In this document: piece after piece, positions 5,741 through 54,687 of the stretch
Numbering within the stretch: position 1 is the stretch's first letter
Layout: each line of letters opens with the position of its first letter
IMG/VR virus record: IMGVR_UViG_3300029983_000007
Coordinates: 62,001 to 126,000 of that record
Direction: 5' to 3' (one strand)
Length of the DNA: 64,000 nucleotides
The notes under the pieces: model-generated
Told to the model about the DNA's origin: nothing
What the model saw: only the letters and a program-made list of their open reading frames with translations
Database searches by the model: none
Made by a program: the position numbers and the translations under genes

Positions 5741-6624
5741 TTATCAATCTCACTCCATTCTTTAAGTAAATTACCATATTTCCAACATTGTACAAGTATT
5801 GATCTAGCTGCATAATACATTGACCCTGATATTCCTAAAAAATCCATTTCAAATGATGTTTTGCTCGCTACTTCTTTAAGTAAATCTAAATCAATTTCTT
5901 TGTTTTTTGATATTGCTTCTGACTGCATTAATTTAGCCCATCCTTCAGCATATTCAAATATACAATTACCATAAGAGTCAGTATTATTGGACTTCCAATC
6001 TTCCCAAGATTTTTCATCTAATAGTTCAATACTAATTCCTTTTATTTTTTCTTTATATTTTCTTTTTGTTTCAACTTCTTTTTTATGTTCTTCAATTCTT
6101 CTTTTTATTGATTCCTCTTCAGATTTTTTTAATTTTTTCTCATAATCATTTTTAGTTTTATCATCATATTCATCATCACATATCGGACCAATTTTAGTCC
6201 ATTTCATAAAATGAGCATCATTATAATACTTATGTAAATTATTGAGATTTGTGTTTTTGTCAATTAAACAAATGATACCATTAAAATCAAAGCTACAAAT
6301 TAAATTGTTTGCAATAGAAAACTTTTTTGCTTCTTTTGAAGTGTAATCAAAATCATATCCTAGCATAACTTGCATTCTCACTCCTGAAGTAGAATTACTA
6401 AGAATTTCTAAAATTTTTTCTTCTTCACTATTGATGATTAAGTTATTAAGAACTTTTAATTTCAATTTTCTATCAATATCATTATTAACACAGAATGTTA
6501 TATACTCTCCATATTCACATTCATAATAACTTGAAAAATTTATATTATTTGATATAAGATATTTAATTAAAATATAATTTTTATCTTTTTTATCTTTTAT
6601 TGTATATGTGAAATATTTATTCAT
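5737..6624 (-). CDS. hypothetical protein; N-domain related to 6912..7355
   Basis: Internal RKLKLKVL...EEKIL shared with neighbour. Confidence 0.7.
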   Translation of the reverse strand: MNKYFTYTIKDKKDKNYILIKYLISNNINFSSYYECEYGEYITFCVNNDIDRKLKLKVLNNLIINSEEEKILEILSNSTSGVRMQVMLGYDFDYTSKEAKKFSIANNLICSFDFNGIICLIDKNTNLNNLHKYYNDAHFMKWTKIGPICDDEYDDKTKNDYEKKLKKSEEESIKRRIEEHKKEVETKRKYKEKIKGISIELLDEKSWEDWKSNNTDSYGNCIFEYAEGWAKLMQSEAISKNKEIDLDLLKEVASKTSFEMDFLGISGSMYYAARSILVQCWKYGNLLKEWSEIDK

Positions 6625-9951: not shown

Positions 9952-11031
9952 TTAAATTTTATATAGAGGACAATCACGATTACAACGAATAAGGTTATTT
10001 CTAAAATTAATAGTCTTTTCGTTATTCCAAATATCATCAATAAAATTACCACATTTTAAAACATTTAGTCCTTCTTTCCAATTTTCTGTATTTGGAGTAA
10101 ATGAGCAAGGAAAATAATTTCCTTTGACATCAATATAGCTACTATAACAACTTGACTCACATGGCTCTACACATTGCTTCATTTTGTTTCTGTATTCATC
10201 TGATAATGAGTTATCTGATTCCAAATATTTTAGAAATTTGTGACTACTGCAACTATCAAATCCTATACTTATTTTTTCATCTAATGCAAATTTGCAAAGT
10301 TCATTAAACTTATCCTGTGGTAAAGGGTGAAATCTATTTTCTGCTCTACCTTTAGTTTTTAAACTTAGTAAAACTAATGCGTTAAGATTTTTTAATCTTT
10401 CATCATTTTTACAATCTTTAATTACTTGCATTGTATAGTCAAAATTTTCCAAGCAAATCATATCGTGAATGTTTACTTGTGTCATTCCTCTATCAGTTAA
10501 TTCTTTTATTGCGTTGTAACTATTGTCTTTATTATAAGATGTACCAACTGATACAGCAACTGCTCCCATTGTTTTTGATAATCTATCATACAATTCTGAT
10601 GTCATTCGTGATCCATTTATTGTTACATTAGGAACAACATCTTGAGAGCGAGTATAATCAAAAATATCCCACATATCTGGATTTGAATCAATGTCTGTTA
10701 TTCCAAATGCTACCTGAGTTACAGTTAAAGGAAGCTTAGAAAAAATGTTTTTATATGTGTCTAATGACATATATTCACCATCTTTATTGTTGCTCTTGTA
10801 GCAAAATGAACAGTTTTGTTTACACGCTGTGTCAATTTCAATATCAGCAATTTCAGGTAATCCTATTTCTAAATCACCATCATCATCTTCTGTTTTACCC
10901 CATCTGGCAAAAAACCCTGTTTTTTTGTTAAATAAGAAATTGTAGTTTTCTGATTTTAAAATTTTAACATCTTTATTATCTACAATTAGTGCTTCTTCAC
11001 CGTTTGAAAGTTTTAATTTAGTTTGTTTCAT
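9952..11031 (-). CDS. Radical SAM enzyme with SPASM/twitch-like C-terminal domain
   Basis: CKQNCSFC (CX3CX2C); C-terminal CES...YIDVKGNYFPCSF...CNRDCP. Confidence 0.9.
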   Translation of the reverse strand: MKQTKLKLSNGEEALIVDNKDVKILKSENYNFLFNKKTGFFARWGKTEDDDGDLEIGLPEIADIEIDTACKQNCSFCYKSNNKDGEYMSLDTYKNIFSKLPLTVTQVAFGITDIDSNPDMWDIFDYTRSQDVVPNVTINGSRMTSELYDRLSKTMGAVAVSVGTSYNKDNSYNAIKELTDRGMTQVNIHDMICLENFDYTMQVIKDCKNDERLKNLNALVLLSLKTKGRAENRFHPLPQDKFNELCKFALDEKISIGFDSCSSHKFLKYLESDNSLSDEYRNKMKQCVEPCESSCYSSYIDVKGNYFPCSFTPNTENWKEGLNVLKCGNFIDDIWNNEKTINFRNNLIRCNRDCPLYKI

Positions 11032-11285
11032 ATTTTGTTTAATTTGTTTAATTTGTCTCTTCTTTCAGATTTTAATGATGATTCAAATAATTCAATATAA
11101 TATAATGTATAGGGTTGTTCTGATATTCCTATACGCAAAATGTCTTTGTTAATAGATGAATATTGTAGTCCATCTACAGTGTAATTTTTATCAAAACTCA
11201 AATCTGATGGTATTCCAATTTGCTCAAATATGTTTGTTGGTTTTTTGAGTATAACTTTATCACCAATTTTCAAGTTTGTTATCAT
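11028..11285 (-). CDS. KIGD-type small protein with RxxKL tail
   Basis: LKIGDKVILK ... ERRDKLNKLNKI. Confidence 0.7.
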   Translation of the reverse strand: MITNLKIGDKVILKKPTNIFEQIGIPSDLSFDKNYTVDGLQYSSINKDILRIGISEQPYTLYYIELFESSLKSERRDKLNKLNKI

Positions 11286-15429: not shown

Positions 15430-15723
15430 TTATTGAATTGAATTTAATTTGTTTAATTTATTTTTTCTTGATAAATTTTTGATAGCATTATCAATTAGGT
15501 TATCTGTAATTTCTTTTTTATAATATCTGAAATTATAAGAAGACTTCATTATTTCTAATTGATGTTCATTTGCATTCATTAATTTATTTAAAATACCCTC
15601 TTCTAATTCTTTATAGAATAGCATTTGACCTACCACTTGAATATCCTTATATTTTAATGTGAGTTCTGAAATTAATTCTAAGTTATCACAACTTTTTTTT
15701 AATTGTTCAATTAATTCCTCCAT
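15430..15723 (-). CDS. RxxKL-tail small protein
   Basis: ends LSRKNKLNKLNSIQ. Confidence 0.65.
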   Translation of the reverse strand: MEELIEQLKKSCDNLELISELTLKYKDIQVVGQMLFYKELEEGILNKLMNANEHQLEIMKSSYNFRYYKKEITDNLIDNAIKNLSRKNKLNKLNSIQ

Positions 15724-18807: not shown

Positions 18808-19178
18808 GATTCAATTTTTAAATCACCAAAAATATCTTTATTGTCATTCACCATCTCTTGTAGCTGTTTTGATCTTGGTGCCATTTTAAATACATTTAAA
18901 TAAAGTTGAGCAACATCATTTAAATCTATTATGATCAAGTGAGTATATAACAAGTCGATTGTCATTTCTTCTATGTTCCAACCTTCTTTTTCCCTAATAC
19001 CATCAGATAATTCTTCAATTAATGCAAAATCTCCACAGATTAACTTAATTAATCTTGAAACTTCAGAATTATACTTTTTTTCTTTGTGACATATTGTAAT
19101 TACTTTATCAGATTTTTTTCTAATTTTTTTCAATATTTCCTCAAAATTACCAAGTGGCTTTATATCTTCTATTTTCAT
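18804..19178 (-). CDS. hypothetical protein
   Basis: 4-nt overlaps. Confidence 0.6.
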   Translation of the reverse strand: MKIEDIKPLGNFEEILKKIRKKSDKVITICHKEKKYNSEVSRLIKLICGDFALIEELSDGIREKEGWNIEEMTIDLLYTHLIIIDLNDVAQLYLNVFKMAPRSKQLQEMVNDNKDIFGDLKIES

Positions 19179-19411
19179 ATCTTAGATTCTTCTTTTGTCT
19201 TTTTTAATTCTATTTCTTTGAATTTCTTCTTTGTTTCTTCAATGTTTTTATTCATTTTTCTGATAATTGAACGAATTTCATCTTCTCTTTGTTCAGCTAA
19301 ACTATCTTCACTCCATTGTTCGTACCTAAAATGATATTTTGGATGATAAATTTTAGCAATACTATTCAATGCTTCACTTTTATACTGTCGTATGATTTCA
19401 TTTTTTGTCAT
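19175..19411 (-). CDS. hypothetical protein, tandem paralog A
   Basis: EALNSIAKIYHPKY...EQRE. Confidence 0.65.
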   Translation of the reverse strand: MTKNEIIRQYKSEALNSIAKIYHPKYHFRYEQWSEDSLAEQREDEIRSIIRKMNKNIEETKKKFKEIELKKTKEESKI

Positions 19412-19449: not shown

Positions 19450-19656
19450 TTACTCAATGTCTTTATGCATCTGTTCAATGATAGAACTTATTTTATGCTC
19501 CCTTTGTTCAGAACAACTTACATCATCACCAAAGTCATAGTAATCTCCTATATCATCCCTGTCATAGTAGTCAAACTTATATTTTGGATTATAAATTTTC
19601 GCAATATTATTCAATGCCTCATTTCTAATTTGTTGTAATATTTGATCTCTTGTCAT
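19450..19656 (-). CDS. tandem paralog B, prematurely terminated
   Basis: EALNNIAKIYNPKY...EQRE; reads KDIE*TKRKYKTI vs KNIEETKKKFKEI in paralog A. Confidence 0.6.
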   Translation of the reverse strand: MTRDQILQQIRNEALNNIAKIYNPKYKFDYYDRDDIGDYYDFGDDVSCSEQREHKISSIIEQMHKDIE

Positions 19657-20107: not shown

Positions 20108-20410
20108 TTATGATTCAAGTAAAATATTATTATTTTTTGTGATTTTTTGTGATTCTTCTATTTGTTTTAATTTTACTTTCCTTTCTTCTTTCTCAGAATA
20201 AAAAAATCTATTAAAATTAGGAAGTTCTTCATAATCTTTTTCTAATGAGAAACAATAATAAGTATATCGATTATTTTCATTAATATTACGCATCTCAACA
20301 AAATATCTAAATAACTCATTCATAACATAATAATTACCTCTAACGAAATCATATATTGATTCTTTACAACAATATTTCCTTTTTGTGTTTTTAATTCTAC
20401 TATCCAACAT
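20108..20410 (-). CDS. RxxKL-tail protein, paralog of 20400..20648
   Basis: KYCCKESIY...FYSEKEERKVKLKQI. Confidence 0.65.
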   Translation of the reverse strand: MLDSRIKNTKRKYCCKESIYDFVRGNYYVMNELFRYFVEMRNINENNRYTYYCFSLEKDYEELPNFNRFFYSEKEERKVKLKQIEESQKITKNNNILLES

Positions 20411-20648
20411 TATTGAGGCTTTCTAATTTTAACATTCTTTCTTCTTTTTCACTGTAAAAATAATCATAAAAATAAAAATAGTAAGTTGTATATTTAAATA
20501 TACAGAAAATTTCATCAAACTCTATTCCATCCACTATCAAACGTAATATAACATCACTGTTGCTACACCAAGTTGTGTAATAACTATGCCCTTTTTCAAA
20601 TCTATATATTGACTTCTTACAAAGATACTTTGTACCTATTTTCAACAT
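20400..20648 (-). CDS. KIG-type RxxKL-tail protein
   Basis: MLKIGTKYLCKKSIY...FYSEKEERMLKLESL. Confidence 0.65.
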   Translation of the reverse strand: MLKIGTKYLCKKSIYRFEKGHSYYTTWCSNSDVILRLIVDGIEFDEIFCIFKYTTYYFYFYDYFYSEKEERMLKLESLNNVG

Positions 20649-20867: not shown

Positions 20868-22742
20868 TTATTTTATTTCCTCAAAATCCACGTCTGTTAC
20901 ATTTTCAGAATCATCTTTTTTGTCAGATGAATTGCTTTCATTCGTTGACTGATTTTTTGATTCTTCATAAAGTTTACCACTAATGTTTTGCCAAACATCA
21001 TTAAGTTCTTTGGTGTATTTATCAATATTATCAACATTTTGAGTTTTGTGAGCTTCTTTAAGATTATCAAGTTTAGAATTCAATTCAGTTTTGTTTTCTT
21101 CATTCAATTTATCACCAAATTCTTCAATTTGTTTTTCAGTTTGAAAAATCATTGAGTCAGCTTGATTCAACTTATCAACTTTTTCTTTTTCTTTCTTATC
21201 AGCATCAGAATTTTGTTCAGCTTCCATTTTCATTCTTTCAATCTCTTCTTTTGTTAGAGATGAATTACCTTCAATCCTAATGTCATTCTTTTTTCCTGTT
21301 GCTTTATCAACTGCAGTAACTGTCAAAATATTATTTGCATCAATTGAAAACGAAATTTCTATTTGCGGTACTCCTCGTCTGGCTGGCATAATTCCATCTA
21401 AATTAAAAGTTCCCAACATTTTATTATCCTTAAACATACTTCTATTTCCAGTTGAAACATTAATCTGAACACCAGGCTGATTGTCAGTGGCTGTACTGAA
21501 TATTTGTGTCTTAGTTGTAGGAATTGTTGTATTAGCCTCTACCATGACACTGGCTACACCGCCCATACTCTCCAGTGAGAAGTTTAAAGCTGTAACATCG
21601 AGTAATAAGATGTCAGTTGTATCACCAGCAAGAACAGATGCTTGTATAGCTGCACCTGATGCAATTGCAGTATCAGGATTAAGTGACTTATTCGCTTTCT
21701 TACCAAAATATTTTTCAATACTTTCTGACAAATATGGAATTCTAGTGCTACCTCCAACAAGTACAATTTCGTCAATATCTGAAACTTTCTTACCACTTTT
21801 ATTCATTGATGATTGAATCAATGATATTGTTTTATCAACATAGAATTGAATCAATTGTTCAAATTTAGATCTTGTTAATTTTTGAACCAAATGTTTAGGT
21901 TGTCCATCTACAGCAGTGATGTATGGTAAATTTATTTCTGTTTGTGTAGTATTAGACAATTCTATTTTTGCTTTTTCTGATGCTTCTGTAACACGTTGTA
22001 GAGCCATTGGATCTTTACGAATATCAACGCCTGTTTCTTTTAAAAATTCATCAGATATAAAATTCACAAGTGCGTCATCAATTAAATTACCACCTAAATC
22101 TAAATCACCATCAGTTCCAATAACTTCAAATAATCCGTCCTCTATATCTAAAACTGAAAAATCACTTGTACACCCACCACTATCAACTATCATATAAAGT
22201 TTACCAGTTTTATCTTTAATATTTAATGATGCTGCTGTTGGTTCAGATATAATTCTATCAACAGTAAATCCTGCTATTTCACCTGCAACTTTTGTACTGC
22301 TTCTTTCATCTGAATTGAAATATGCTGGAGTTGTTATGACCGCATTGGTTACATTTGTTCCAAGGTAATCTTCTGCTGTTTTTTTCATTTTTTGAAGGAT
22401 CATTGCAGAAATTTCTTCTGGTGAATATATTCTTTCACCAATTTTTACACCAGCCTTACCATTATTATCAACTATATCATAAGGACGTTTAAGATGTTTA
22501 ACTTCCTCATAAGTTCTACCAATAAGTCTTTTGATATTAAAAATTGTGTTTTTTGGATTTAATGCTGCTTGTCTTTTTGCAGATTCACCAACTTTAATTT
22601 CTCCTGTTTTTTCATCAAATGATACAATTGAAGGAGTTGATAGCGATCCTTCTGAATTAGGTATGACAATTGTTTGTCCACCTTCTACTATAGATACGGC
22701 TGAATTGTATGAACCTAAATCTATTCCAATAATTTTTCCCAT
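20868..22742 (-). CDS. dnaK: Hsp70 chaperone DnaK
   Basis: IIGIDLG, TPAYF, LVGGSTRIP, GVPQIEISF, C-terminal DVDFEEIK. Confidence 0.97.
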   Translation of the reverse strand: MGKIIGIDLGSYNSAVSIVEGGQTIVIPNSEGSLSTPSIVSFDEKTGEIKVGESAKRQAALNPKNTIFNIKRLIGRTYEEVKHLKRPYDIVDNNGKAGVKIGERIYSPEEISAMILQKMKKTAEDYLGTNVTNAVITTPAYFNSDERSSTKVAGEIAGFTVDRIISEPTAASLNIKDKTGKLYMIVDSGGCTSDFSVLDIEDGLFEVIGTDGDLDLGGNLIDDALVNFISDEFLKETGVDIRKDPMALQRVTEASEKAKIELSNTTQTEINLPYITAVDGQPKHLVQKLTRSKFEQLIQFYVDKTISLIQSSMNKSGKKVSDIDEIVLVGGSTRIPYLSESIEKYFGKKANKSLNPDTAIASGAAIQASVLAGDTTDILLLDVTALNFSLESMGGVASVMVEANTTIPTTKTQIFSTATDNQPGVQINVSTGNRSMFKDNKMLGTFNLDGIMPARRGVPQIEISFSIDANNILTVTAVDKATGKKNDIRIEGNSSLTKEEIERMKMEAEQNSDADKKEKEKVDKLNQADSMIFQTEKQIEEFGDKLNEENKTELNSKLDNLKEAHKTQNVDNIDKYTKELNDVWQNISGKLYEESKNQSTNESNSSDKKDDSENVTDVDFEEIK

Positions 22743-22760: not shown

Positions 22761-22994
22761 TTATTTTTTATTAATTTTTATTAATTGTAATTTTCTATAT
22801 TCTTTTAGTGATATGAATCTGTTAGCATCAAATCTACCTTTTATATTAGTTAATCCTACACTATTAACATTATAACTATAACAATACTCATCTATGACAT
22901 ACGTAGAATATTTTTTTAAATTCTTATATGGTTCAAAAGTAGTAGCATCATCACCATCATCAATACAAACAACTATATCTCCTATTTTAAACAT
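22761..22994 (-). CDS. KIGD-type RxxKL-tail protein
   Basis: MFKIGDIVVCIDD...RFISLKEYRKLQLIKI. Confidence 0.7.
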   Translation of the reverse strand: MFKIGDIVVCIDDGDDATTFEPYKNLKKYSTYVIDEYCYSYNVNSVGLTNIKGRFDANRFISLKEYRKLQLIKINKK

Positions 22995-23019: not shown

Positions 23020-23084
23020 TCAATAGTCATGCCAAAACAATGATAGTGTCATTGAGTCATAATATATGACAAATTGACACTATC
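23020..23084 (-). promoter_or_regulatory. Putative sigma54-like promoter with upstream TGTCA/TGACA inverted repeat
   Basis: TGGCATG-ACTA-TTGA at 23034-23020; GATAGTGTCA...TGACACTATC at 23042-23084. Confidence 0.5.
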
Positions 23085-23093
23085 TTTATTTTT

Positions 23094-23372
23094 TTAACTG
23101 TCAAACACGATCATCATTTTATTTATCCAAGGATGTGCTTCAAAAAAAGCTAATATCCAATAATATGCTTCTGGATCATAATCATCTTTATTTTCTTCAA
23201 TTAATTCTGATTTTCTCCAATGAGATTTACCTTCGACTGATGATATATGATGTTCTCTTATATAATCACAACATTTGTTCCATTCCATATTAGAATTTAT
23301 TGTTATAAATTCTATAATATCACATTCATCCACATAATGTATCTGTTGAGTTTCGTCTAATACTTGTTTCAT
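23094..23372 (-). CDS. hypothetical protein
   Basis: 92 aa ORF. Confidence 0.6.
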   Translation of the reverse strand: MKQVLDETQQIHYVDECDIIEFITINSNMEWNKCCDYIREHHISSVEGKSHWRKSELIEENKDDYDPEAYYWILAFFEAHPWINKMMIVFDS

Positions 23373-23381
23373 ATTTTATAT

Positions 23382-23564
23382 TTAATAATACCAACAATTT
23401 AAACAAGCTTCAACATTATCATCAATTTGAACTAATGATTCTAAATCTTGACTTCCATGTGGAAAATCCTCATTGCTTGAAATCTTTTCTCTCAAATCAT
23501 CAATATGTTTTAATAGATTTTCTCTAAGAGTTACTTCATATTTTTTTCTATCTTCTTCTGTCAT
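23382..23564 (-). CDS. hypothetical protein
   Basis: 60 aa; promoter directly upstream. Confidence 0.6.
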   Translation of the reverse strand: MTEEDRKKYEVTLRENLLKHIDDLREKISSNEDFPHGSQDLESLVQIDDNVEACLNCWYY

Positions 23565-23578
23565 TTTTATATTTTGTG

Positions 23579-23610
23579 CAAAGATAATAAAAATATTTGT
23601 ATCTTACAAA
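23579..23610 (-). promoter_or_regulatory. Bacteroidota-type promoter
   Basis: TTTG-N20-TATCTTTG. Confidence 0.7.
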
Positions 23611-23617
23611 TTTTCGC

Positions 23618-23653
23618 AAAAAAAGGATGAAAATAATTTTTTCATCCTTTTTT
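23618..23653. terminator. Intrinsic terminator after rtcB
   Basis: AAAAAAGGATGAAAA...TTTTCATCCTTTTTT. Confidence 0.75.
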
Positions 23654-23655
23654 AA

Positions 23656-24528
23656 TTAAAACTTTTTCATTTTTTGGTAAGAAATTTCATTTCTTTCGTT
23701 ACTACGTTGCTTATCTTTCTTTTTTTGTTCTTTCTTGTCCTTCCAAGATGTACCTTCAGATTTATCTTTGATATTTAAGATTGGTTTGATTTTATCAAGA
23801 ATCAAAGCAGTAGGTCCAATTGCTTTTTCAATCATTTCAGAGTTTTTGTAAGCAAATGGTGATTCATCAATTGTACTTTTACATACAGAAGTTGAATATA
23901 TACCTTTCATTACTCTCTGAAAGTCTTTTAAATCAACTGACTCTTTTGCTTTTGATCTTGACATCAAACGACCAGAACCATGTGGAGCTGAGTTATTCCA
24001 ATCTTCATTTGATTTACCTTCACATATAAGTATTCCATCTCTCATATTGAATGGTATAATCATTTTTTCTCCAACATATGAAGATATAGCACCTTTTCTT
24101 ATGATAAAGTCTTTGAAATCCACATAGTTATGTATTGAATGAATTTCTTCATCAAATTTTTTGATATTCAATGCTTTTTTTATCAAAGACAACATAGTTT
24201 TTCTGCTCCATAGAGCATATTGTTGAGCAAAAATCATATCAAATAGATAACCAATAAGATATTCTCCGTCTAAATATTCTTTGCCAATATTAAGACTGTA
24301 TCTTGTTCTCAATTCTTTTATTTTTTTATCAATATCAGATTTTGGATAAGTATTCATAGTAATGTCATCCAATTCCATGTTATATTCTTTGGTTGCAACA
24401 AATACTTTACCATTTGCTACTTTAGTCCAGTGTTCAGCTATTTTCAAACCAAAGTTTCTTGAGCCAGAGTGAACTGTTACCCAATAATCATTAGTCTTAT
24501 CTGACTTACCAAGTTCAATAAAGTGATT
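23656..24528 (-). CDS. rtcB: RtcB RNA ligase, 3' exon
   Basis: NHFIE, VHSGSRNFG, HNY, RKGA, SAPHGSGR, IDESPFAYK. Confidence 0.93.
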   Translation of the reverse strand, partial: NHFIELGKSDKTNDYWVTVHSGSRNFGLKIAEHWTKVANGKVFVATKEYNMELDDITMNTYPKSDIDKKIKELRTRYSLNIGKEYLDGEYLIGYLFDMIFAQQYALWSRKTMLSLIKKALNIKKFDEEIHSIHNYVDFKDFIIRKGAISSYVGEKMIIPFNMRDGILICEGKSNEDWNNSAPHGSGRLMSRSKAKESVDLKDFQRVMKGIYSTSVCKSTIDESPFAYKNSEMIEKAIGPTALILDKIKPILNIKDKSEGTSWKDKKEQKKKDKQRSNERNEISYQKMKKF

Positions 24529-25622
24529 CAATTTTGTTACTATTATTTTAATTTCAATCTAAATAACCTCATTTTTATAGATTGCTTTGTTCTTTTAAGA
24601 TTTTCTATTGATTCAGATATATCATTATTTATAATATAATTATCTTCATAGTCTGTCCATATTTTACGTTCAAAATCTATTTTTTTGATATTAATTGGTC
24701 TTTCCCAATTTAATATTTTTTGAGCAGAATCATATTTTCTATTTATACTCATACAATCTTTATAATATAATATTTCAATTATTTTTTGAGAATTTTCATT
24801 CATCACCATTATATTATATAAGTTATCTCTTTTATTTTTATTTGTTATTTTTTTATATCCAATAATGTTAGATAAAAAAACAACAAATTGTTCAGCAAGT
24901 TTACTAGAACATGTAACTAAAGATATGAAAGGTAATCCTTTTTTTGTAAATCCTAATGATCCATCGCCATCTATAACTCCTCTCCAGTAATCAATTTCTA
25001 TTATATTATCTGGTTTCTGAATTGTGTGTGATTTTTTACCAACAGGTAAATACTTTTTAAATTCATTTCTTGTTTCTAATTCAAATATTTTTAATGCTGA
25101 TGTATTTGAAATATATTTGTATTCTTTAATATTAATATTTCTTGTTCTTTCAGTTATTGAAACATTACAATTAAGAATAGATTTTATATATTTTAATATA
25201 TTATCATCACTTTTATTTATTTCAAGTGTGATTCTTCCTCTATTTCTAGTTGATTCGTATAAATTACCATCAGTTTGTAATAAACCTATAATGTATGCAT
25301 GTTTCTTATTTAAAATGTCTATTTTCATAATGTGTTTTTATTTGTATATATAATTTCACTTTATTGAAAATTTACATTTCATTGAAATTGTAATAACGAG
25401 ATAGACATTTCTGCTATCTTCAATATCTTCTTATTAAATATTGTTCAGAATGTACCTTTTACCTTTGTGTATTACAGTGAGATAAAACAAGTCCCTCCAT
25501 TCGTTACAGGGTGTTATCTAAAATGACAGAGCACTTCCCTCGGTATTAGCATCACAGCCGTCCACCGATTTGGACGATTTTAACTACTATTAGCTATTAA
25601 CTAATACGGTGGCAATCAATTC
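24529..25622 (-). mobile_element. Group I intron in rtcB carrying a LAGLIDADG endonuclease
   Basis: Interrupts GGG|NHF; exon GGTGGT pairs with IGS GCCACC (U.G at splice site); TGATT/AATCA P10; AAATCGGT/ATACCGAG P4; GAATG/CATTC P7; terminal G. Confidence 0.9.
24543..25328 (-). CDS. Intron-encoded double-motif LAGLIDADG homing endonuclease
   Basis: YIIGLLQTDGNL and YWRGVIDGDGSL; own late-type promoter at 25345-25353. Confidence 0.9.
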   Translation of the reverse strand: MKIDILNKKHAYIIGLLQTDGNLYESTRNRGRITLEINKSDDNILKYIKSILNCNVSITERTRNINIKEYKYISNTSALKIFELETRNEFKKYLPVGKKSHTIQKPDNIIEIDYWRGVIDGDGSLGFTKKGLPFISLVTCSSKLAEQFVVFLSNIIGYKKITNKNKRDNLYNIMVMNENSQKIIEILYYKDCMSINRKYDSAQKILNWERPINIKKIDFERKIWTDYEDNYIINNDISESIENLKRTKQSIKMRLFRLKLK

Positions 25623-26144
25623 ACCACCGCCTAACGTTCCAATTGATTTATAAAATTTACCTTCGTCAATACCTATATCTTTCAATTTTGATGTTAGCCA
25701 TTTTTCATTGTATGTAGGTGATTCATAAGAAGTTCCAAATTTTTCATTAAATTTTACAATGAAATTATCCGCAATTACTTGAACATCGCCAAACGGTATA
25801 TTTTTAAATTTAATATCTTCGTGCATACCAAATCCCATAGGAACATTTTCACGTATAAGATTGTCAATTTTCTCTAAATCTAATGAAGTCTTACCTGAAA
25901 AACTTGCGCTAAGCATCCCGCAGCCCAAATCTACTCCGATCGTCGACGGCTTAATGTATTTACCTAATTCTTGTGTATATCCGATTACGCATCCCGATCC
26001 AACATGTGTATCTGGCATTATTCTGATTTTCAATCCTTTAGATGTCTCAGAATTAATACTATCATATATTTGAGTATATACTCCTTCTTCAACTTCATCG
26101 ATAAATATTTTAGCGTCAGTATATTTACCTTTTAATTCAATCAT
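25623..26144 (-). CDS. rtcB: RtcB RNA ligase, 5' exon
   Basis: IMPDTHVG, IGVDLGCGM, SIGTLGGG; spliced product 464 aa. Confidence 0.93.
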
Positions 26145-26195
26145 AATTTACCTCCTTTTTTTAATTGATTTTAATTATTATTTTAATATATTTTG

Positions 26196-26226
26196 CAAAT
26201 GTACTACATTTATTTTGATTGACAAA
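26196..26226 (-). promoter_or_regulatory. Bacteroidota-type promoter for rtcB
   Basis: TTTG-N19-TACATTTG. Confidence 0.7.
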
Positions 26227-26467
26227 ATATTTCATTCAATTTATTTATTTTATTTATTTTATTCATTCTTAAAACTCTTTTACTAATGAAAAATGATCCA
26301 TAACTTATATAACATATAACTCCAGCATCTGTCATTATTGATATAGCTCCAAGCATTATTTCTAATACTTTATAATCTTTGCCTACTGAAATAAGGTGAT
26401 CATTTGTGTTATCAATTTTGATGCAAGTAACAATTTCACCAATTTTATATTTATTTATTTTTTTCAT
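26210..26467 (-). CDS. KIG-type RxxK-tail protein
   Basis: YKIGEIVTCI...VLRMNKINKI. Confidence 0.65.
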   Translation of the reverse strand: MKKINKYKIGEIVTCIKIDNTNDHLISVGKDYKVLEIMLGAISIMTDAGVICYISYGSFFISKRVLRMNKINKINKLNEIFCQSK

Positions 26468-26789
26468 TTATTTTATTAAGTTTCAATGTTCTATATTCTT
26501 TTACCCCAATGAATCTTTTCATATCAAAAACAGTATGTCCATGTATCTTTTCAACTTCATCTAATATATATGATGTGTTTTCATATGTACTACTGGTATT
26601 ATCAATTTTGTCTCCACAATTTCCATCATCTCCCCAATATGTATGAATTTCTTTAATTGTATAATATTTATACTTTTCTAATGGATTTATTTTATGATAT
26701 TCTAAAATACAAGAAGAATAATCATAAAATATTTCCTTTGAGTAAGGTTTATCATCAATACAAACCATAATATCACCTACTTTGTACAT
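26451..26789 (-). CDS. KVGD-type RxxKL-tail protein
   Basis: MYKVGDIMVCIDD...KEYRTLKLNKI. Confidence 0.7.
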   Translation of the reverse strand: MYKVGDIMVCIDDKPYSKEIFYDYSSCILEYHKINPLEKYKYYTIKEIHTYWGDDGNCGDKIDNTSSTYENTSYILDEVEKIHGHTVFDMKRFIGVKEYRTLKLNKINEKNK

Positions 26790-27017
26790 ATCTTATTAAG
26801 TTTTTCTAATTTCATTTTTCTATAATAAGAAGTTTTAATAAAATATGATGATTTAAACCATAATACAATATTTCTTGTTTCAATACGAATGTAGATTGAA
26901 TAAAAAAGATGATTTGTTGATTTTATTTTATATCTTTCTCATTTTTTTTAGATATTCACGAGAAAGGTAATCTCCATCATCATTAATAAAAGTAACAGAA
27001 TCACCTACTTTGAACAT
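26777..27017 (-). pseudogene. Disrupted KVGD-type RxxKL-tail gene
   Basis: MFKVGDSVTFINDD...; break at A8 run near 26942-26949; resumes to YYRKMKLEKLNKICTK. Confidence 0.65.
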
Positions 27018-27274
27018 ATTTTATTGAGTTTTTCTAATTTCATTTTTCTAATTGATTGATCATCTGTGAAAAATTCTATCGGTATAAATTGGGAAAATCT
27101 TTTTGTGTCAGTTTTTATACAAATTTTATTAAAAAAATGATAATCTAAATCATTGATTTTATATTTTTTGCCTATTGTTAAATGTTGTTCCCAGTAATCA
27201 TCATTGTCATATTTTACGCAAGTAACAACTTGTCCAATTTTAAAATCTTGATAAGTCAATTCTTTATTTTGCAT
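27005..27274 (-). CDS. KIG-type RxxKL-tail protein
   Basis: FKIGQVVTCV...SIRKMKLEKLNKICSK. Confidence 0.7.
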   Translation of the reverse strand: MQNKELTYQDFKIGQVVTCVKYDNDDYWEQHLTIGKKYKINDLDYHFFNKICIKTDTKRFSQFIPIEFFTDDQSIRKMKLEKLNKICSK

Positions 27275-27543
27275 AATTTATTGAGTTTTATTTTTCTTAA
27301 AATTGAAATCAATTCTCTTTCAGTTATAAAATGATTACTTATTGATTGTCTGCATATATTTCCATTGATATTAGATTTAATAATTATTCCATATTTTGAA
27401 TTATTATTGTTATAACTTATTGAAAGTATATCTACATCATGTGAAATATTTAAATTAAATTTTTTGTTATAATATTGTCTTAATTCTCTTAATAAGAGTA
27501 AATATGATTTAATGTCTAAGTTTGAAACTATATTGTCTGACAT
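27256..27543 (-). CDS. RxxKL-tail protein
   Basis: ends ILRKIKLNKLCKIKN. Confidence 0.6.
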   Translation of the reverse strand: MSDNIVSNLDIKSYLLLLRELRQYYNKKFNLNISHDVDILSISYNNNNSKYGIIIKSNINGNICRQSISNHFITERELISILRKIKLNKLCKIKN

Positions 27544-27866
27544 AATTTTACAAGTTTTTGTTTTCTCAAAAAAATATTATGTTCTTTATCATCAACAAAT
27601 TGATATAGCACATCACCTATAACTTCATGATTAGAATACATAAGTGTATATATTTTGTGTTCAAACCTAATAGAAAAAGATGTTTCGCATGAATAGAAAA
27701 TTTCAAACCTTCTATTGTATCTTTCATTAAGTAATGTTATTGCAGCAGACCTAATTATTTCTTTTCTTTCATCTTTTGTAATAAAATTATCCATTTGATA
27801 ACAATTACGAGGCATACCCCATAATCCATTATCTTGTTTTTTTGATTTTATTGGTATTATATCCAT
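27528..27866 (-). CDS. RxxKL-tail protein
   Basis: ends FLRKQKLVKLCQTI. Confidence 0.65.
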   Translation of the reverse strand: MDIIPIKSKKQDNGLWGMPRNCYQMDNFITKDERKEIIRSAAITLLNERYNRRFEIFYSCETSFSIRFEHKIYTLMYSNHEVIGDVLYQFVDDKEHNIFLRKQKLVKLCQTI

Positions 27867-27876
27867 GATAATTTAA

Positions 27877-28383
27877 TTATAATTTGCCTAAACTATTCAG
27901 TTCATTATTCAGTTTAGATCCAAGCAGTTCCAAATTTTTCAGTTGATTTTTTACTTGATTTATACTATCATTAAAATCTTCTTTGATATTATTATTAAAT
28001 TCTTCTATATCATCTTTATTTATTAACTCATCTAATTTTTTATACAATTCTTCACGTTCCATATTGTTTGCATTATAATCAAATTCATCATTTTCAGTAT
28101 CTTTTTCATATTGAGATTCATTTTCAGATATCTTTTTGTTTACAGATAGTATATCATCTTTTGTTTTATTAGATAATTCTTTAAATTTGAAAGTATATTC
28201 TTCAGTTATAAGAGGACACCATTTTGGTTTATATTCATTCTCATCTAACTCGATATAATGTTCATTTAATTTTAAATAATTTGATAATACGCATATATTT
28301 GTGTCTGGATTTACTGTTGCATCATAGTCATATTCTGTGTGACAAAAAGGGCAATTCAAGCAACCATTTACTGTTTTTTTCAT
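27877..28383 (-). CDS. Cys-rich N-domain plus coiled-coil protein
   Basis: CLNCPFC...C...PKWCPL. Confidence 0.65.
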   Translation of the reverse strand: MKKTVNGCLNCPFCHTEYDYDATVNPDTNICVLSNYLKLNEHYIELDENEYKPKWCPLITEEYTFKFKELSNKTKDDILSVNKKISENESQYEKDTENDEFDYNANNMEREELYKKLDELINKDDIEEFNNNIKEDFNDSINQVKNQLKNLELLGSKLNNELNSLGKL

Positions 28384-28550
28384 TTTAAGTTATTTATTTT
28401 TTCTATCTTTTTCTTTCTTTCTATTTTTGTTATTTTTCTTTTTAGTTCAGCAGCTAATTTTTCATCTATATCAAAAGATTCTGGATATAAACTTGCATAA
28501 TCAAAATTAGATATACTATATAAATCTTCAAATTTCAGATTCTTCTTCAC
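28380..28550 (-). CDS. Small protein: PolB motif-A-like peptide fused to RxxKI tail
   Basis: Manual translation (GTG) MKKNLKFEDLYSISNFDYASLYPESFDIDEKLAAELKRKITKIERKKKIEKINNLK; ATGA-coupled to next gene. Confidence 0.6.
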   Translation of the reverse strand: MKKNLKFEDLYSISNFDYASLYPESFDIDEKLAAELKRKITKIERKKKIEKINNLK

Positions 28551-29187
28551 TACAATTTATTTTATTTAATTTTATTTTTCTATTGAATTTTATCAATAGT
28601 TCAGTATCCTTATATCTTAATATAGACAATTCAAATCCGTTATTATTATAATGATTTTCTAATTTAGATATAAATAATTCAAAATTTTCAGATAGAACTC
28701 CATTTTTTTCAAATATTTTTGGCTTGTTATTTTTATTTTCATATATTCCTCTAATTAGAACCTTATTTATACGTGTTGAAAAATTTATATAATCTTGGTC
28801 ATTGCATAATTTCCAATTTTGATTTAATATTAATTTTTTAATTTTTTTATATTGTTCATCTATGATACCCCAATAGTGATATTCATTTTCACTGTCAGCT
28901 CCTTTGTTATAGCTACTTATAAATATTACATATGGAGTATCTTTATATAAAGTTTTGAATAATTCATATTTAGATTTGCAATCTAAATCAAACACTGGAT
29001 AAATAACATTTTTAAATTTTGACTCAATTAAAACTTCACAATATCTATCAATATTAATCATAGTTCTGAAGTATTTCATTATACTACCAATAGATTTATA
29101 TTTTAGTTTTGATGTTGTATCATAACTTCCATAATGTGTTGTTTGATGTAGATATATTAATTCATTTTTATTTTTAAATAAAATCAT
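28528..29187 (-). CDS. hypothetical protein, possible AEP primase-like fold, RxxKL tail
   Basis: VFDLD, SS...HYW, D.DY; ends FNRKIKLNKI. Confidence 0.55.
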   Translation of the reverse strand: MILFKNKNELIYLHQTTHYGSYDTTSKLKYKSIGSIMKYFRTMINIDRYCEVLIESKFKNVIYPVFDLDCKSKYELFKTLYKDTPYVIFISSYNKGADSENEYHYWGIIDEQYKKIKKLILNQNWKLCNDQDYINFSTRINKVLIRGIYENKNNKPKIFEKNGVLSENFELFISKLENHYNNNGFELSILRYKDTELLIKFNRKIKLNKINCSEEESEI

Positions 29188-29199
29188 ATTATTTTTTAA

Positions 29200-29418
29200 T
29201 TATTTATACTGATGATTTCTGTTATGTTTCCAAGTTTTATACATTCTTATTTGGTACATTAACAATTGTTTCTTTTTATATTTCCTTGTTAATCTTGAGC
29301 ATTCTGGATAAAAGTGTAAACCCTCATCCCAATAAGGATCAGTATTATCGTTAGTTATAATATTGTAGGTTTTGTTGTCAGTTACTACTTCTGATTTCGG
29401 ACATTTTATTCTTTTCAT
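29200..29418 (-). CDS. small basic protein
   Basis: ends YKTWKHNRNHQYK. Confidence 0.6.
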   Translation of the reverse strand: MKRIKCPKSEVVTDNKTYNIITNDNTDPYWDEGLHFYPECSRLTRKYKKKQLLMYQIRMYKTWKHNRNHQYK

Positions 29419-29606
29419 TTCTATTTGATTATTTTTTAATAATCTAATAGTTATCTAATTTTTTCTTCATTTTGTATATTATGTCATCTTTAAATTTTAT
29501 ATATATGTTTTTTAATTAAATGTTTTTTAAAAATATAAAACTTTTTTTATTTATATGATATAAGTGATATAATTTTAAATTGATTCTATACTCAAATAGA
29601 TTTTTA

Positions 29607-30152: not shown

Positions 30153-30410
30153 ATGAAATATCATGTCGGTGATAACGTTGTGTTCATAAATAATTCCAAA
30201 AATGCTTACGATTGGAACATAACTGAGTATAAAATCTATAAAATTTATGGATATTCAATTCATAAATCTCAAATTGTATATTCTGTCAAATTTGGAACAA
30301 CTATTCAAAGTTGGTACAGTGAATGTGACTTCATGTCATTAAAAGAATATAGAAAATTGAAAATAGAAAAAATAAATAAACTAAAAAATGGGTATATTGG
30401 AGATAGATAG
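30153..30410 (+). CDS. VGD-type RxxKI-tail protein
   Basis: YHVGDNVVFI...FMSLKEYRKLKIEKI. Confidence 0.65.
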   Translation: MKYHVGDNVVFINNSKNAYDWNITEYKIYKIYGYSIHKSQIVYSVKFGTTIQSWYSECDFMSLKEYRKLKIEKINKLKNGYIGDR

Positions 30411-30623: not shown

Positions 30624-30937
30624 AAAAAATTAAAAAAATAATAATTTTTTTAAATAAGTCATTTAATCCATATTATGAATTAAATAAACAGGCAAAAACA
30701 ATTGAAAATATATATGAAAAACTTATATCAAGTCAATTAGATAGTAGACTGAATGAACTTGAAAGACTTAGAAATATGAGTGAAGAAGATATAAAAAATG
30801 AGAAAGAAAAAATCTTAAATATAGAGGCAACTAAAATATTAACTCAGTTAGAATGTAATCCAGAATTATATAGAGTATTTAATAATATATTAAGAATAAA
30901 TAAATTTAAAAAAATAGAAGATAGTAAAAATGAGTAA
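30620..30937 (+). CDS. RxxK-tail protein
   Basis: ends ILRINKFKKIEDSKNE. Confidence 0.6.
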   Translation: MKKIKKIIIFLNKSFNPYYELNKQAKTIENIYEKLISSQLDSRLNELERLRNMSEEDIKNEKEKILNIEATKILTQLECNPELYRVFNNILRINKFKKIEDSKNE

Positions 30938-31514
30938 TTTAATAGAACATGCAAAAAAAGAATTTATAGCATTAGGATATAAACCAGTTGATGAATGTGA
31001 AGAAGGACCAAATAGATGGGTACAAGAAAATGTATTGGAATTACTTGAGATGTTTTCTAAACAAGGACATTCAGGATTTTCAGCAAAAATTGTTATTGAC
31101 TATTTTAAAAAATTAGCAAATTTTAAACCAATTGCGCCAATTATGTGTACTGATGATGAATGGATCGATGTTTCTATATATAATAATGATGTGACTTATC
31201 AAAATACTCGTTGTTCTGCTGTTTTTAAAAATTCAATAAATGACTCACCATATTATTTGGATGCAATAGTTTTTGTTGAAGATGGAAATTCATCTTATAC
31301 TGGAGGTGCTTTTAATAAGAAGCATGAACGTATCACAAGTAGTCAAGAAATAAAAATTCCGTTTATTCCAAAATCTTTTTATGTCGATGTTGTAGATATT
31401 GATGGAGAACATCACATTAAAGATGAATCTCAATTAAAGGAAATTTGGGAATATTATGAGCATCAAGAAACAAAATCATTTATTAGATTACAAAAATTAA
31501 AAGCATTAAAATGA
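30930..31514 (+). CDS. phage protein with RxxKL tail
   Basis: QGHSGFSA motif; ends FIRLQKLKALK. Confidence 0.7.
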   Translation: MSNLIEHAKKEFIALGYKPVDECEEGPNRWVQENVLELLEMFSKQGHSGFSAKIVIDYFKKLANFKPIAPIMCTDDEWIDVSIYNNDVTYQNTRCSAVFKNSINDSPYYLDAIVFVEDGNSSYTGGAFNKKHERITSSQEIKIPFIPKSFYVDVVDIDGEHHIKDESQLKEIWEYYEHQETKSFIRLQKLKALK

Positions 31515-31729
31515 AAATAACAATAGATGAATCACAATTTGATGTCAAATGGGATTTTGGAGATTTACCAGATAATCCCAGTAAAAGTTTGACTATTGAT
31601 ATGTTAAATAGGTGGCAAGAATTTATAAATTATGACAAAATAAATGAAGCAAGAAAAGAAGCAAGAAAATTAAGAATTGATAAATTAAATGAAATAATTT
31701 CAAAATCAAATGACAATACAGAATTATAA
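31511..31729 (+). CDS. RxxKL-tail protein
   Basis: KLRIDKLNEI. Confidence 0.6.
   Translation: MKITIDESQFDVKWDFGDLPDNPSKSLTIDMLNRWQEFINYDKINEARKEARKLRIDKLNEIISKSNDNTEL

Positions 31730-51111: not shown

Positions 51112-54687
<3,576 letters not shown>

What the first reader, a model, noticed from the sequence alone, without database searches (positions are those of the whole stretch)
26772..27050. Gene-junction direct repeats suggest cassette shuffling of the KIGD...RxxKL family
Seen: a roughly 50-bp near-identical repeat at about 26772-26822 and 27000-27050. It encodes the tail of one gene (RKMKLEKLNKICxK*) overlapping the head of the next (M(F/Y)KVGD). At least nine genes (11028, 20108, 20400, 22761, 26210, 26451, 26777, 27005, 30153) share a similar head and tail around a hypervariable middle that looks like a small SH3/KOW-like barrel. 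Inference: conserved ends serve as recombination joints for expansion, contraction and swapping, which could also explain how foreign fragments acquire the tail.
Basis: partly seen in the sequence, partly recalled or inferred. Interest (0 to 1): 0.65.

Follow-up and report, generated by a model that had tools for sequence, protein, structure and literature searches.

The report
Megaphage gene family with recombining junctions
A roughly 0.7-Mb phage from peat bogs carries dozens of tiny, fast-evolving SH3-like genes, plus unrelated genes, that all end in the same basic peptide (R-K-x-K-L-x-K-L-N), and the DNA for that shared ending, overlapped by the next gene's start, is where whole genes have been gained and lost between related phages.

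Summary
The repeat is real. From the Arg codon, 27049-27000 and 26821-26772 (minus strand) agree at 47 of 50 bases. That is the best of 1,891 tail-junction pairs in the 330-kb record.

Each copy holds one gene's tail (RKMKLEKLNKICxK, stop) overlapped by the next gene's head (M-F/Y-KVGD). The 228-bp unit between the copies is a frameshifted family member. Two related phage lineages have a single junction copy and lack this unit.

Other gene-sized differences also end inside tails. One left an in-register chimeric tail in the window.

The family is large. A body-only profile finds 29 members, and the fold model gives an SH3/KOW-like barrel plus a C-terminal helix. The tail also ends about 30 unrelated ORFs, so roughly 10% of ORFs carry it.

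Conservation acts on the peptide. Synonymous sites and codon usage in tails match the genome, and there is no promoter, terminator or RNA structure.

Best reading: a conserved peptide written in a 24%-GC codon dialect creates many direct DNA homologies, and recombination uses them for cassette gain and loss. This is a coding analogue of T4 PeSL shuffling. The tail's function is unknown. No circles or deletion forms could be tested, because only contigs were available.

The parts
27000..27050 (-). Junction copy J1: tail of gene 27005-27274 (RKMKLEKLNKICSK, stop) overlapped by the head MFKVGD of the broken gene
26772..26822 (-). Junction copy J2: tail of the broken gene (RKMKLEKLNKICTK, stop) overlapped by the head MYKVGD of gene 26451-26789. 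This copy matches the single junction of relative L016 at the amino-acid level
26777..27017 (-). Frameshifted family member between J1 and J2. The head frame stops after 29 codons, and the tail lies in another frame beyond the A8 run at 26942-26949. It is absent from both related lineages
27005..27274 (-). 89-aa SH3-like member with tail. This is the protein that was modelled
26451..26789 (-). 112-aa member with a long variable insert and the tail
26210..26467 (-). 85-aa member with a degenerate tail (KINKINKLN)
22761..22994 (-). 77-aa member directly upstream of the phage DnaK. Relative L011 has an extra 115-aa member here, bounded by a tail repeat
30153..30410 (+). 85-aa member on the other strand
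11028..11285 (-). 85-aa member
20400..20648 (-). 82-aa member (head MLKIGT, tail RMLKLESLN)
20108..20410 (-). 100-aa weak member. It has no KIGD head and the tail motif lies 15 aa before the stop
27528..27866 (-). 112-aa protein with an unrelated body. Its tail RKQKL-VKLCQTI is an in-register hybrid of two tails that are separated by a 96/98-aa gene in both relatives
27256..27543 (-). 95-aa protein with an unrelated body, carrying the tail
28528..29187 (-). 219-aa protein with an unrelated body, carrying the tail. It is present in L016 and absent at this place in L011. Its indel is not tail-bounded
28380..28550 (-). 56-aa ORF ending RKKKIEKINNLK
15430..15723 (-). 97-aa helical ORF with an unrelated body, carrying the tail
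31511..31729 (+). 72-aa ORF with the tail motif 12 aa before the stop

Best explanation
The window comes from a 330-kb fragment of a huge phage of about 0.7 Mb from peat (24% GC). The two 50-bp copies are gene junctions of a large, previously undescribed family of 75-115-aa proteins. Each protein has a conserved first strand (K-I/V-G-D-x-x-x-C), a hypervariable SH3/KOW-like barrel, and a conserved C-terminal basic helix ((F/Y)-F-Y-T-x-x-E-x-R-K-x-K-L-x-K-L-N). The same helix also ends about 30 ORFs with unrelated bodies.

Shown:
- The tail is kept by selection on the peptide.
- Because the genome uses almost one codon per residue, the same peptide is written as nearly the same 27-50 nt about 60 times per 330 kb. 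The copies sit at gene ends and are often overlapped by the next gene's start.
- Gene-sized gains and losses between related lineages end inside these tracts and in register.
- One such event placed a family member, now frameshifted, between J1 and J2.

Inferred:
- These tracts act as passive substrates for homologous or short-homology recombination. That could be unequal exchange between neighbouring tails, or exchange with a co-infecting relative or another array.
- This recombination adds, removes and re-joins whole cassettes while keeping frames intact. It gives birth-and-death evolution of the arrays and can put the tail on other bodies.
- The tail is a common docking or localisation helix, and the variable barrel is a target-binding surface of early host-takeover or anti-defence proteins.
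For: Repeat and its rank.

Peptide-level conservation:
- The DNA pattern for the tail core occurs 33 times against 0.2 expected.
- 31 of those 33 lie 10 codons or fewer before an in-frame stop.
- Orthologous tails use CTC, CTG, CTA and CTT for the same Leu.
- Tail pS is 0.355, against 0.3-0.47 in most gene-wide comparisons, with pN 0.158.
- Tail codon usage equals the genome's.

Family:
- The body-only profile finds 29 members, 27 with the tail.
- A second tandem array of 13 copies has a period of 232-298 bp.
- Fold model. Barrel matches.
- No Pfam or PHROG family matches.
- The nearest Atlas clusters are virus-only hypotheticals.

Breakpoints:
- Both relatives have one junction copy and no 228-bp unit. 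At the two informative variable sites, J1 matches the ancestral-like junction on its left and J2 on its right.
- Hybrid in-register tail where the 96/98-aa gene is missing.
- Extra 115-aa gene in L011 bounded by a tail repeat of about 40 nt.
- Three extra members in L011.
- Array 2 has 13 copies against 15 in relative G005, without collinear orthology.
- A run of neighbouring G005 copies (six analysed) shares near-identical tail DNA, most with a rare CTT Leu codon. Their bodies are only 33-45% identical, with tail pS 0.21 against body pS 0.39.

The arrays are the most diverged stretch between lineages. dN/dS is 0.24-0.93 for members against 0.04-0.08 for RtcB.
Against: - Only three lineages exist in the collections searched, and they cannot be rooted with confidence (dS values are similar). 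Gain versus loss is therefore inferred by parsimony.
- Gene-sized indels that survive selection will tend to end at gene boundaries whatever the mechanism.
- Three of the indels in the same 9 kb are not tail-bounded.
- All contigs of the window's own lineage, from ten or more samples, are 99.8-100% identical with the same array. Shuffling is therefore not frequent on that time scale.
- No donor for the inserted body was found in the 330 kb or in IMG/VR.
- No deletion or circle junction was seen in contigs of four peat runs.
- General tails are not homogenised. Their synonymous sites are as diverged as the genome's.
- No RecA-type recombinase is present in this 46%-complete fragment.
- The function of the tail is not shown by anything here.
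Confidence: 0.6

Rival explanations
1. The repeats are only the trace of protein conservation in a tandemly duplicated family. They have no part in recombination. Gene-sized indels end at gene boundaries because only such indels leave working neighbours.
For: Conservation acts on the peptide and tails are not homogenised in general. Some indels are not tail-bounded. Close relatives are invariant.
Against: - Endpoints lie inside the 9-codon motif and in register, giving a hybrid tail.
- The inserted unit is a broken gene, so selection for an intact cassette does not explain its exact one-junction period.
- Three independent cases have a near-identical repeat flanking exactly one member.
- There is local sharing of a rare synonymous codon among neighbouring tails.
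Confidence: 0.25
2. The junction is a regulatory DNA or RNA cassette, such as a promoter, terminator or translation re-initiation site, like the PeSLs of T4-type phages. The peptide is incidental.
For: The tract is A-rich and lies just upstream of, or over, the next start codon in many cases. The host may use non-sigma-70 signals that the scan cannot see.
Against: - 31 of 33 pattern hits are in frame at ORF ends, and none lie in intergenic DNA or other frames beyond chance.
- Synonymous sites are free to vary.
- The distance to the next start varies from overlap to more than 10 nt, and some tails have no following gene.
- There is no excess of promoter-like sites (41 against 39.2) and no terminators.
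- The junction RNA is unstructured (z 0.04 and +2.09).
Confidence: 0.04
3. The unit between J1 and J2 is an old member that is decaying in place in the window's lineage and was deleted in the other two. Alternatively it is still expressed through slippage at the A8 run. The near-identity of J1 and J2 then reflects only dual-frame constraint.
For: - The J sequence is also 47/50 identical between the window and L016, so this tract evolves slowly.
- The best relative of the unit's C-terminal half is the upstream neighbour (41% over 53 aa, mostly tail).
- A8 runs are known sites of polymerase slippage (general knowledge).
Against: - This needs two losses if the window and L016 are sisters, as the flanks suggest.
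- The pseudogene's own tail in J2 is under no peptide constraint if it is untranslated, yet it is 26/27 identical to J1's tail.
- The losses would themselves be tail-to-tail deletions, so this supports the joint idea anyway.
Confidence: 0.1
4. Assembly artefact: a collapsed or mis-joined repeat in a metagenome assembly.
For: Short direct repeats in AT-rich DNA can mislead assemblers.
Against: The same arrangement, base for base, appears in independent assemblies from several samples (L001, L003, L015, L161). A 511-nt contig from another run spans 26541-27051 without a difference.
Confidence: 0.01

Closest known systems
PeSL (promoter-early stem-loop) cassettes in hyperplastic regions of T4-type phages (Arbiol et al. 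2010, PMC2839356; Comeau et al. 2014, PMC4122927)
   Same: Short repeats of about 50 nt flank small non-essential ORFs in variable regions of a large phage. Insertions, deletions and replacements between related phages end in the repeats.
   Different: PeSLs are non-coding regulatory units (a sigma-70-like promoter plus a terminator hairpin), and mini-circles were shown physically. Here the repeat is coding: one gene's C-terminal peptide overlapped by the next gene's start. It has no promoter, hairpin or structure, and no circles have been shown.
Polymorphic toxin loci (CDI/Rhs and others), where conserved coding motifs before the variable C-terminal domain let stand-alone cassettes recombine in (Zhang et al. 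2012, PMC3482391 abstract; details from general knowledge)
   Same: A conserved peptide-coding tract serves as the homology for swapping variable coding cassettes in frame.
   Different: There the constant part is a large N-terminal delivery protein and the cassette is a toxin tip with its immunity gene. Here whole tiny genes are the cassettes, the constant tract is at the 3' end, and nothing indicates toxins.
Tandem paralogue arrays or 'gene accordions' of large DNA viruses (poxviruses, giant viruses; general knowledge)
   Same: Lineage-specific expansion and contraction of tandem copies under an arms-race-like regime. Body dN/dS here is 0.24-0.93 between lineages and about 1 between paralogues.
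   Different: Accordions amplify one gene as near-identical copies. Here neighbours are only 30-45% identical in the body, while the junction stays alike.
SH3-like small beta-barrels (SH3, KOW of NusG/Spt5, ribosomal L24, chromo/Tudor, PsaE)
   Same: The predicted fold has four to five strands in a small barrel. The best matches are Spt5 KOW (Z 6.8, rmsd 2.2, 59 aa), SH3 domains and NusG KOW. The head K-I/V-G-D-x-V resembles the first strand of KOW/Tudor-type barrels.
   Different: No sequence membership was found (Pfam gives no hit at E of 1 or less). The scores are middling. The conserved basic C-terminal helix is not part of those families.
Integron gene cassettes
   Same: Single promoterless ORFs in arrays, each with a recombination site at its 3' end.
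   Different: attC sites are imperfect inverted repeats that fold and are cut by an integrase. The junction here has no inverted repeat or fold, and no integrase link is seen.

Membership tests
PeSL regulatory cassette (T4-type phages) | Strong sigma-70-like early promoter inside the repeat | tested here: not met
   41 promoter-like sites in 26000-29500 against 39.2 expected, and none tied to the junctions. Caveat: promoters of non-sigma-70 type are not covered.
PeSL regulatory cassette (T4-type phages) | Stem-loop terminator next to the promoter | tested here: not met
   No terminator-like sites. Junction RNA folds no better than shuffles (z 0.04 and +2.09).
PeSL regulatory cassette (T4-type phages) | Non-coding, intergenic position | tested here: not met
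   31 of 33 pattern hits are in frame within 10 codons of a stop. Synonymous variation is as in the genome.
PeSL regulatory cassette (T4-type phages) | Indels and replacements between related phages end in the repeats | tested here: met
   The 228-bp unit, the 96/98-aa gene, the 115-aa gene and the three extra L011 members all end in tails or junctions. Three other indels do not.
PeSL regulatory cassette (T4-type phages) | Mini-circles formed by exchange between neighbouring repeats | not testable with these tools
   Only Logan contigs of the peat runs were available, and they drop rare forms.
SH3-like small beta-barrel fold | Five-stranded small barrel | tested here: inconclusive
   The AF2 model (pLDDT 80.7) has four strands of three or more residues, a bridge at 69-70 and a C-terminal helix at 72-88. 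It is a model only, built from 26 related sequences.
SH3-like small beta-barrel fold | Significant structural match to solved members | tested here: inconclusive
   All top hits are SH3, KOW, chromo, L24 or PsaE. Foldseek E is 0.03-0.1 and Z is 5.2-6.8, which is in the range the tool calls middling.
Pfam SH3 / KOW / Tudor sequence families, or any Pfam or PHROG family | Profile match above the curated cut-off | tested here: not met
   No Pfam family at E of 1 or less for eight members. Only PHROG hits of unknown function at E 0.003-0.1. Atlas neighbours have no Pfam family.
Integron cassette (attC) | Imperfect inverted repeat that folds as single strand | tested here: not met
   No inverted repeat at the junctions and no structure.
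Tandem multigene family evolving by birth and death | Copy number and orthology differ between related genomes, and pseudogenes are present | tested here: met
   - Array 1 has 4 members plus 1 pseudogene in the window, against 3 in L016 and 6 in L011.
- Array 2 has 13 copies against 15, with non-collinear best hits.
- One frameshifted and one truncated member are present.

The most novel reading that the evidence does not exclude
The C-terminal R-K-x-K-L-x-K-L-N helix may be a proteome-wide address tag of this megaphage clade. About one ORF in ten, with many unrelated bodies, would use it to dock to one shared machine or place. Candidates are a phage compartment, the packaged DNA or capsid for co-injection, a chaperone, or a protease. 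The hypervariable SH3-like family would then be a diversifying library of binders delivered through that tag. On this reading, in-frame recombination at the tag is how the phage recruits new proteins to the pathway.
Probability: 0.25. Interest if true: 0.85.

Novelty: new variant of a known kind. Interest (0 to 1): 0.55.

Why it matters
Huge phages carry hundreds of small genes of unknown function, and how they gain and turn over this content is poorly understood. Three points follow from this locus.

- It shows a simple route for that turnover. A conserved peptide ending, in a genome with almost one codon per residue, automatically creates dozens of frame-preserving recombination sites. Between three related phages, whole genes come and go exactly there.
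- It extends the PeSL idea from regulatory repeats to coding repeats.
- It defines a large, fast-evolving, virus-only family (an SH3-like barrel plus a basic helix). It also shows a C-terminal tag shared by about 10% of the ORFs, which suggests a common partner that could be searched for experimentally.

Tried and rejected
- **Donor of the inserted body.** tblastn and blastn against the 330-kb record and an IMG/VR scan (one search failed because the query was too short) found only the unit itself and the neighbour's orthologues.
- **More lineages.** IMG/VR and the JGI metagenome scan gave only the same three lineages. The two largest relatives' records are not held for genome search.
- **Reads.** All 16 runs are peat metagenomes kept as contigs. 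The tool itself flags such joints as cross-matches. There was no 228-bp deletion and no circle junction.
- **Homodimer of the 89-aa protein.** No verdict (score 0.01). This is not evidence either way.
- **GenBank phages.** tblastn with a member found no match.
- **Genetic code.** A recoded stop was considered because relatives of huge phages sometimes recode. It was rejected: table 11 gives dense ORFs, and all three stop codons terminate long ORFs (TAA 153, TGA 47, TAG 9 for ORFs of 150 aa or more). No other code was used.
- **Capsid and RecA family searches in the fragment.** No hits. This is uninformative in a 46%-complete record.
- **Rfam search for an intron in the RtcB insertion.** No hit.
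- **The large all-against-all protein search** was not run, because the pattern scan already showed the family's range.
Full report
**Source of the window.** The window is positions 62,001-126,000 of a 330,208-bp IMG/VR virus record with 24% GC, which CheckV rates 46% complete. One of its proteins is also on record on a 711-kb contig. Identical contigs come from many peat or fen metagenomes. Its DnaK is closest (53-57%) to those of the 630-735-kb 'uncultured phage' records LR7565xx. Other genes include PhoH-PIN, a family-B polymerase fragment, RtcB, and Tad3- and Tad4-like proteins. I take it to be a fragment of a huge phage of about 0.7 Mb. Table 11 was used throughout. Long ORFs end in TAA, TGA and TAG, so nothing points to another code.

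**The observation.** The repeat finder reports a 72-nt direct repeat, 26751-26822 / 26979-27050, at 85% identity and 228 bp apart. From the Arg codon the two copies agree at 47 of 50 bases.
- On the minus strand each copy encodes RKMKLEKLNKIC(S/T)K-stop. It contains the ATG of the next gene, which reads M(F/Y)KVGD in another frame.
- I anchored 50 nt at every tail of this kind in the 330 kb (62 tails, 1,891 pairs). This pair is the most alike (mean 27.7, sd 3.7). The runner-up (45/50) is again a pair of neighbours, in a second array.

**The unit between the copies.** The stretch 26777-27017 is not an intact gene.
- The head frame (MFKVGD...) stops after 29 codons.
- The tail lies in a different frame beyond an A8 run at 26942-26949.
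- Contigs from other samples are identical here. A 511-nt contig from a run not flagged as the source spans 26541-27051 without a difference.
- The frameshift is therefore real in the population and not a one-off error.

**The family.**
- A profile of the listed genes finds about 40 ORFs in the record.
- With the tail removed from both profile and targets, 29 ORFs still match at E below 1e-3, and 27 of them carry the tail.
- Thirteen sit in a head-to-tail array at record positions 191.3-195.0 kb with a period of 232-298 bp. Pairwise DNA identity there is 0.71-0.87 over the 45 nt of the tail and 0.4-0.5 in the bodies.
- The conserved columns are the head (K-I/V-G-D-x-x-x-C), a central G-x-x-Y strand, and (F/Y)-F-Y-T-x-x-E-x-R-K-x-K-L-x-K-L-N.
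- An AlphaFold2 model of the 27005 protein built on this alignment has mean pLDDT 80.7. It has four strands, a bridge, and a C-terminal helix at 72-88 that is the tail.
- Foldseek's best solved matches are Fyn and Lyn SH3, PWWP, chromo, FeoA and Spt5 KOW (E 0.03-0.1).
- VIA-align puts Spt5 KOW first (Z 6.8, rmsd 2.2, 59 residues). SH3 domains, NusG KOW, L24 and PsaE follow at Z 5.2-6.5.
- These scores are middling, but every top hit is a small SH3-like barrel.
- Pfam has no hit at E of 1 or less, and PHROGs has only unknown families at E 0.003 or more. The nearest Atlas clusters are virus-only hypotheticals without Pfam. GenBank phages give no tblastn hit.

**The tail is wider than the family.**
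- A peptide pattern for R-K-x-K-L-x-K-L-N hits 49 times in 604 ORFs. Of these, 40 lie within 10 residues of the C-terminus. A looser pattern gives 62 ORF ends, about one ORF in ten.
- The carriers range from 32 to 293 aa and include bodies with no likeness to the barrel. Examples are the 219-, 112- and 95-aa proteins next to the finding, and a protein whose first 88 residues are a DUF6794 domain.
- An exact-pattern scan of IMG/VR found the tail at ORF ends in many AT-rich contigs. Most are from the same peat series, but some come from unrelated samples. In one set of proteins the motif is internal and followed by a further 90-170 residues.

**Peptide or nucleic-acid signal?** Several results point to the peptide.
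- The degenerate DNA pattern that encodes the core occurs 33 times against 0.2 expected from a third-order Markov model. Of these, 31 lie 10 codons or fewer before an in-frame stop, and 29 are at the end of an open frame of 40 codons or more.
- In six sets of orthologous tails from the three lineages, the fixed positions have pS 0.355 and pN 0.158. Gene-wide pS in the same comparisons is mostly about 0.3-0.47. One Leu is written CTC, CTG, CTA and CTT in four copies.
- Codon usage at the motif's Leu, Arg, Lys and Asn positions equals the genome's.
- The distance from the motif to the next start codon varies from overlap to more than 10 nt, and some tails have no gene behind them.
- There is no excess of promoter-like sites and no terminator. 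The junction RNA folds no better than shuffles.
- The tail is therefore kept as a peptide. The DNA likeness follows because, at 24% GC, each residue is written with nearly one codon (TTA 61%, AGA 77%, AAA 89%, AAT 86%).

**Relatives.** Only three lineages could be found in IMG/VR, the JGI metagenomes and the protein-contig index.
- The window's own lineage: all contigs are 99.8-100% identical.
- The L016-L019/L163 lineage.
- The L011/L162 lineage.
- Synonymous divergence between lineages is about 0.4-0.7.

The region is syntenic from the Tad3-like gene to DnaK, but its content differs:
1. Both relatives go straight from the orthologue of 27005 to the orthologue of 26451 through a single junction. 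The 51 nt of L016 at that junction align to both J1 and J2 of the window. The window therefore has exactly one extra period of 228 bp. Of the three sites that differ between J1 and J2, one is uninformative. J1 agrees with L016 at the left informative site and J2 at the right one, as expected if a cassette was joined in through the junction.
2. Both relatives have a 96/98-aa gene between the orthologues of 27528 and 27256, and the window does not. The window's tail, RKQKL-VKLCQTI, matches the upstream tail on its left and the lost gene's tail on its right. The switch lies inside the nine-codon motif and in register.
3. L011 has an extra 115-aa member before DnaK. It is bounded by two tail tracts of about 40 nt that are near-identical, where the window and L016 have one.
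4. L011 has three more members (84, 74 and 80 aa) before RtcB. Two of the junctions are near-identical.
5. The second array has 13 copies in the window's record and 15 in relative G005. Four window genes share one best hit, and best-hit identities are only 42-59%, although the flanks are 75-85% identical in DNA.
6. In G005 a run of neighbouring copies (six analysed) has near-identical tail DNA, most with a rare CTT Leu codon. Their bodies are 33-45% identical, with tail pS 0.21 against body pS 0.39. This is a modest sign of local homogenisation or serial unequal exchange.

**Exceptions.** Some indels do not end in tails.
- The 219-aa gene is absent at this place in L011 and has no repeat at its left end.
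- The 92-aa gene also has no tail at its ends.
- A 1,094-nt insertion with a LAGLIDADG ORF splits RtcB in the window only.

**Rates.** Members have dN/dS of 0.24-0.93 between lineages. RtcB has 0.04-0.08 and the 72-aa neighbour has 0.07-0.16. A sliding comparison with L016 shows the array as the most diverged stretch (0.65-0.80), against 0.91-0.97 in RtcB-C and its neighbours. The bodies therefore evolve fast, and the genome is a mosaic.

**Interpretation.**
- Shown: the repeat; the family and its fold class as a model; peptide-level conservation of the tail; the tail on unrelated bodies; array differences between lineages, with several endpoints inside tails, one of them an in-register hybrid.
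- Inferred: the tracts act as passive recombination substrates. Events could be unequal exchange between neighbouring tails for losses and tandem gains. Gains like the 228-bp unit, whose body has no relative in the 330 kb or in IMG/VR, could come from exchange with another array or a co-infecting relative.
- Parsimony favours gain of the unit and loss of the 96-aa gene in the window's lineage, if the window and L016 are sisters as the flanks suggest. The rooting is weak.
- The main rival is that selection alone places surviving indels at gene ends. It cannot be excluded with three lineages. It explains less well a broken cassette with an exact one-junction period, the in-register hybrid, and the repeated pattern of a near-identical tract on both sides of one member.
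- A regulatory-cassette reading of the PeSL type is largely excluded.

**What the tail does is open.** It is a basic helix with Leu/Ile three residues apart, preceded by a T/S-x-x-E cap. About a tenth of the ORFs carry it, in regions rich in small early-type and anti-defence-like genes. My working guess is that it is a shared docking or localisation helix and that the barrel is a variable binding surface. This is inference only. A homodimer test gave no verdict.

**Comparison with known systems.**
- The nearest mechanism is PeSL-mediated modular shuffling in T4-type phages (PMC2839356, PMC4122927). Three of its defining features (promoter, hairpin, non-coding position) were tested and not met. 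This locus therefore works like a PeSL region without being one.
- Polymorphic-toxin loci offer a coding analogue, with conserved peptide motifs as in-frame recombination sites (PMC3482391).
- I rate it a new variant of a known kind, resting on a new and large protein family.

- Read laying was given 2,801 letters.
- No alternative code was named.
- The broken gene was only read frame by frame.
- The large representative search was not used.

Noticed in passing
window 23656-26144 (insertion 24529-25622; LAGLIDADG ORF 24543-25328): RtcB is split into a 184-aa and a 291-aa ORF by a 1,094-nt insertion that carries a free-standing LAGLIDADG endonuclease ORF. Both related lineages have an intact 464-aa RtcB. 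No Rfam intron family matched at E of 0.1 or less. It could be an unrecognised intron or a gene split by a homing endonuclease. This is open.
   Followed up: partly
window 30930-31514 and 5737-6624: A Tad3-like protein (PF25185, from precomputed hits) and a Tad4-like protein (PF25186, E 2.7e-21), both anti-Thoeris families, lie near the arrays. The Tad3-like protein ends in a weak version of the tail (FIRLQKLKALK).
   Followed up: no
G000:C1:191300-195000 (outside the window; locus L025): A second tandem array of 13 members plus a 50-aa truncated one. Relative G005 has 15 copies with non-collinear best hits. A run of neighbouring G005 copies (six analysed) shares near-identical tail DNA, most with a rare CTT Leu codon.
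   Followed up: yes
loci L052, L058, L069, L084, L100 (IMG/VR relatives): These proteins have the motif F-Y-D-E-K-x-I-R-K-x-K-L-x-K-L-N-N in an internal position, followed by a further domain of 90-170 residues. The helix is therefore not always terminal in this clade.
   Followed up: no
window 20868-22742: A phage-encoded DnaK/Hsp70 (624 aa), 53-57% identical to those of the 630-735-kb LR7565xx phages. Family members sit directly upstream of it in all three lineages.
   Followed up: partly
window 49471-50952 and 51112-54687: A family-B DNA polymerase ORF of only 493 aa (exonuclease plus the start of the polymerase domain), possibly split. Next to it is a 1,191-aa protein with collagen triple-helix repeats.
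   Followed up: no
window 19175-19411 and 19450-19656: Two adjacent paralogous small genes (78 and 68 aa) share a 106-nt stretch at 80% identity. This is another small local duplication, without the tail.
   Followed up: no
L030 = G000:C1:244806-245204: A 132-aa protein whose first 88 residues match DUF6794 (E 5e-19) and whose C-terminus carries the tail. It is an example of a recognisable foreign domain with the tag.
   Followed up: partly
window 23029-24525 versus 26325-27835: Mosaic divergence from relative L016: 91-97% DNA identity over RtcB-C and the next two genes, against 65-80% over the array. This suggests different histories for neighbouring segments.
   Followed up: partly
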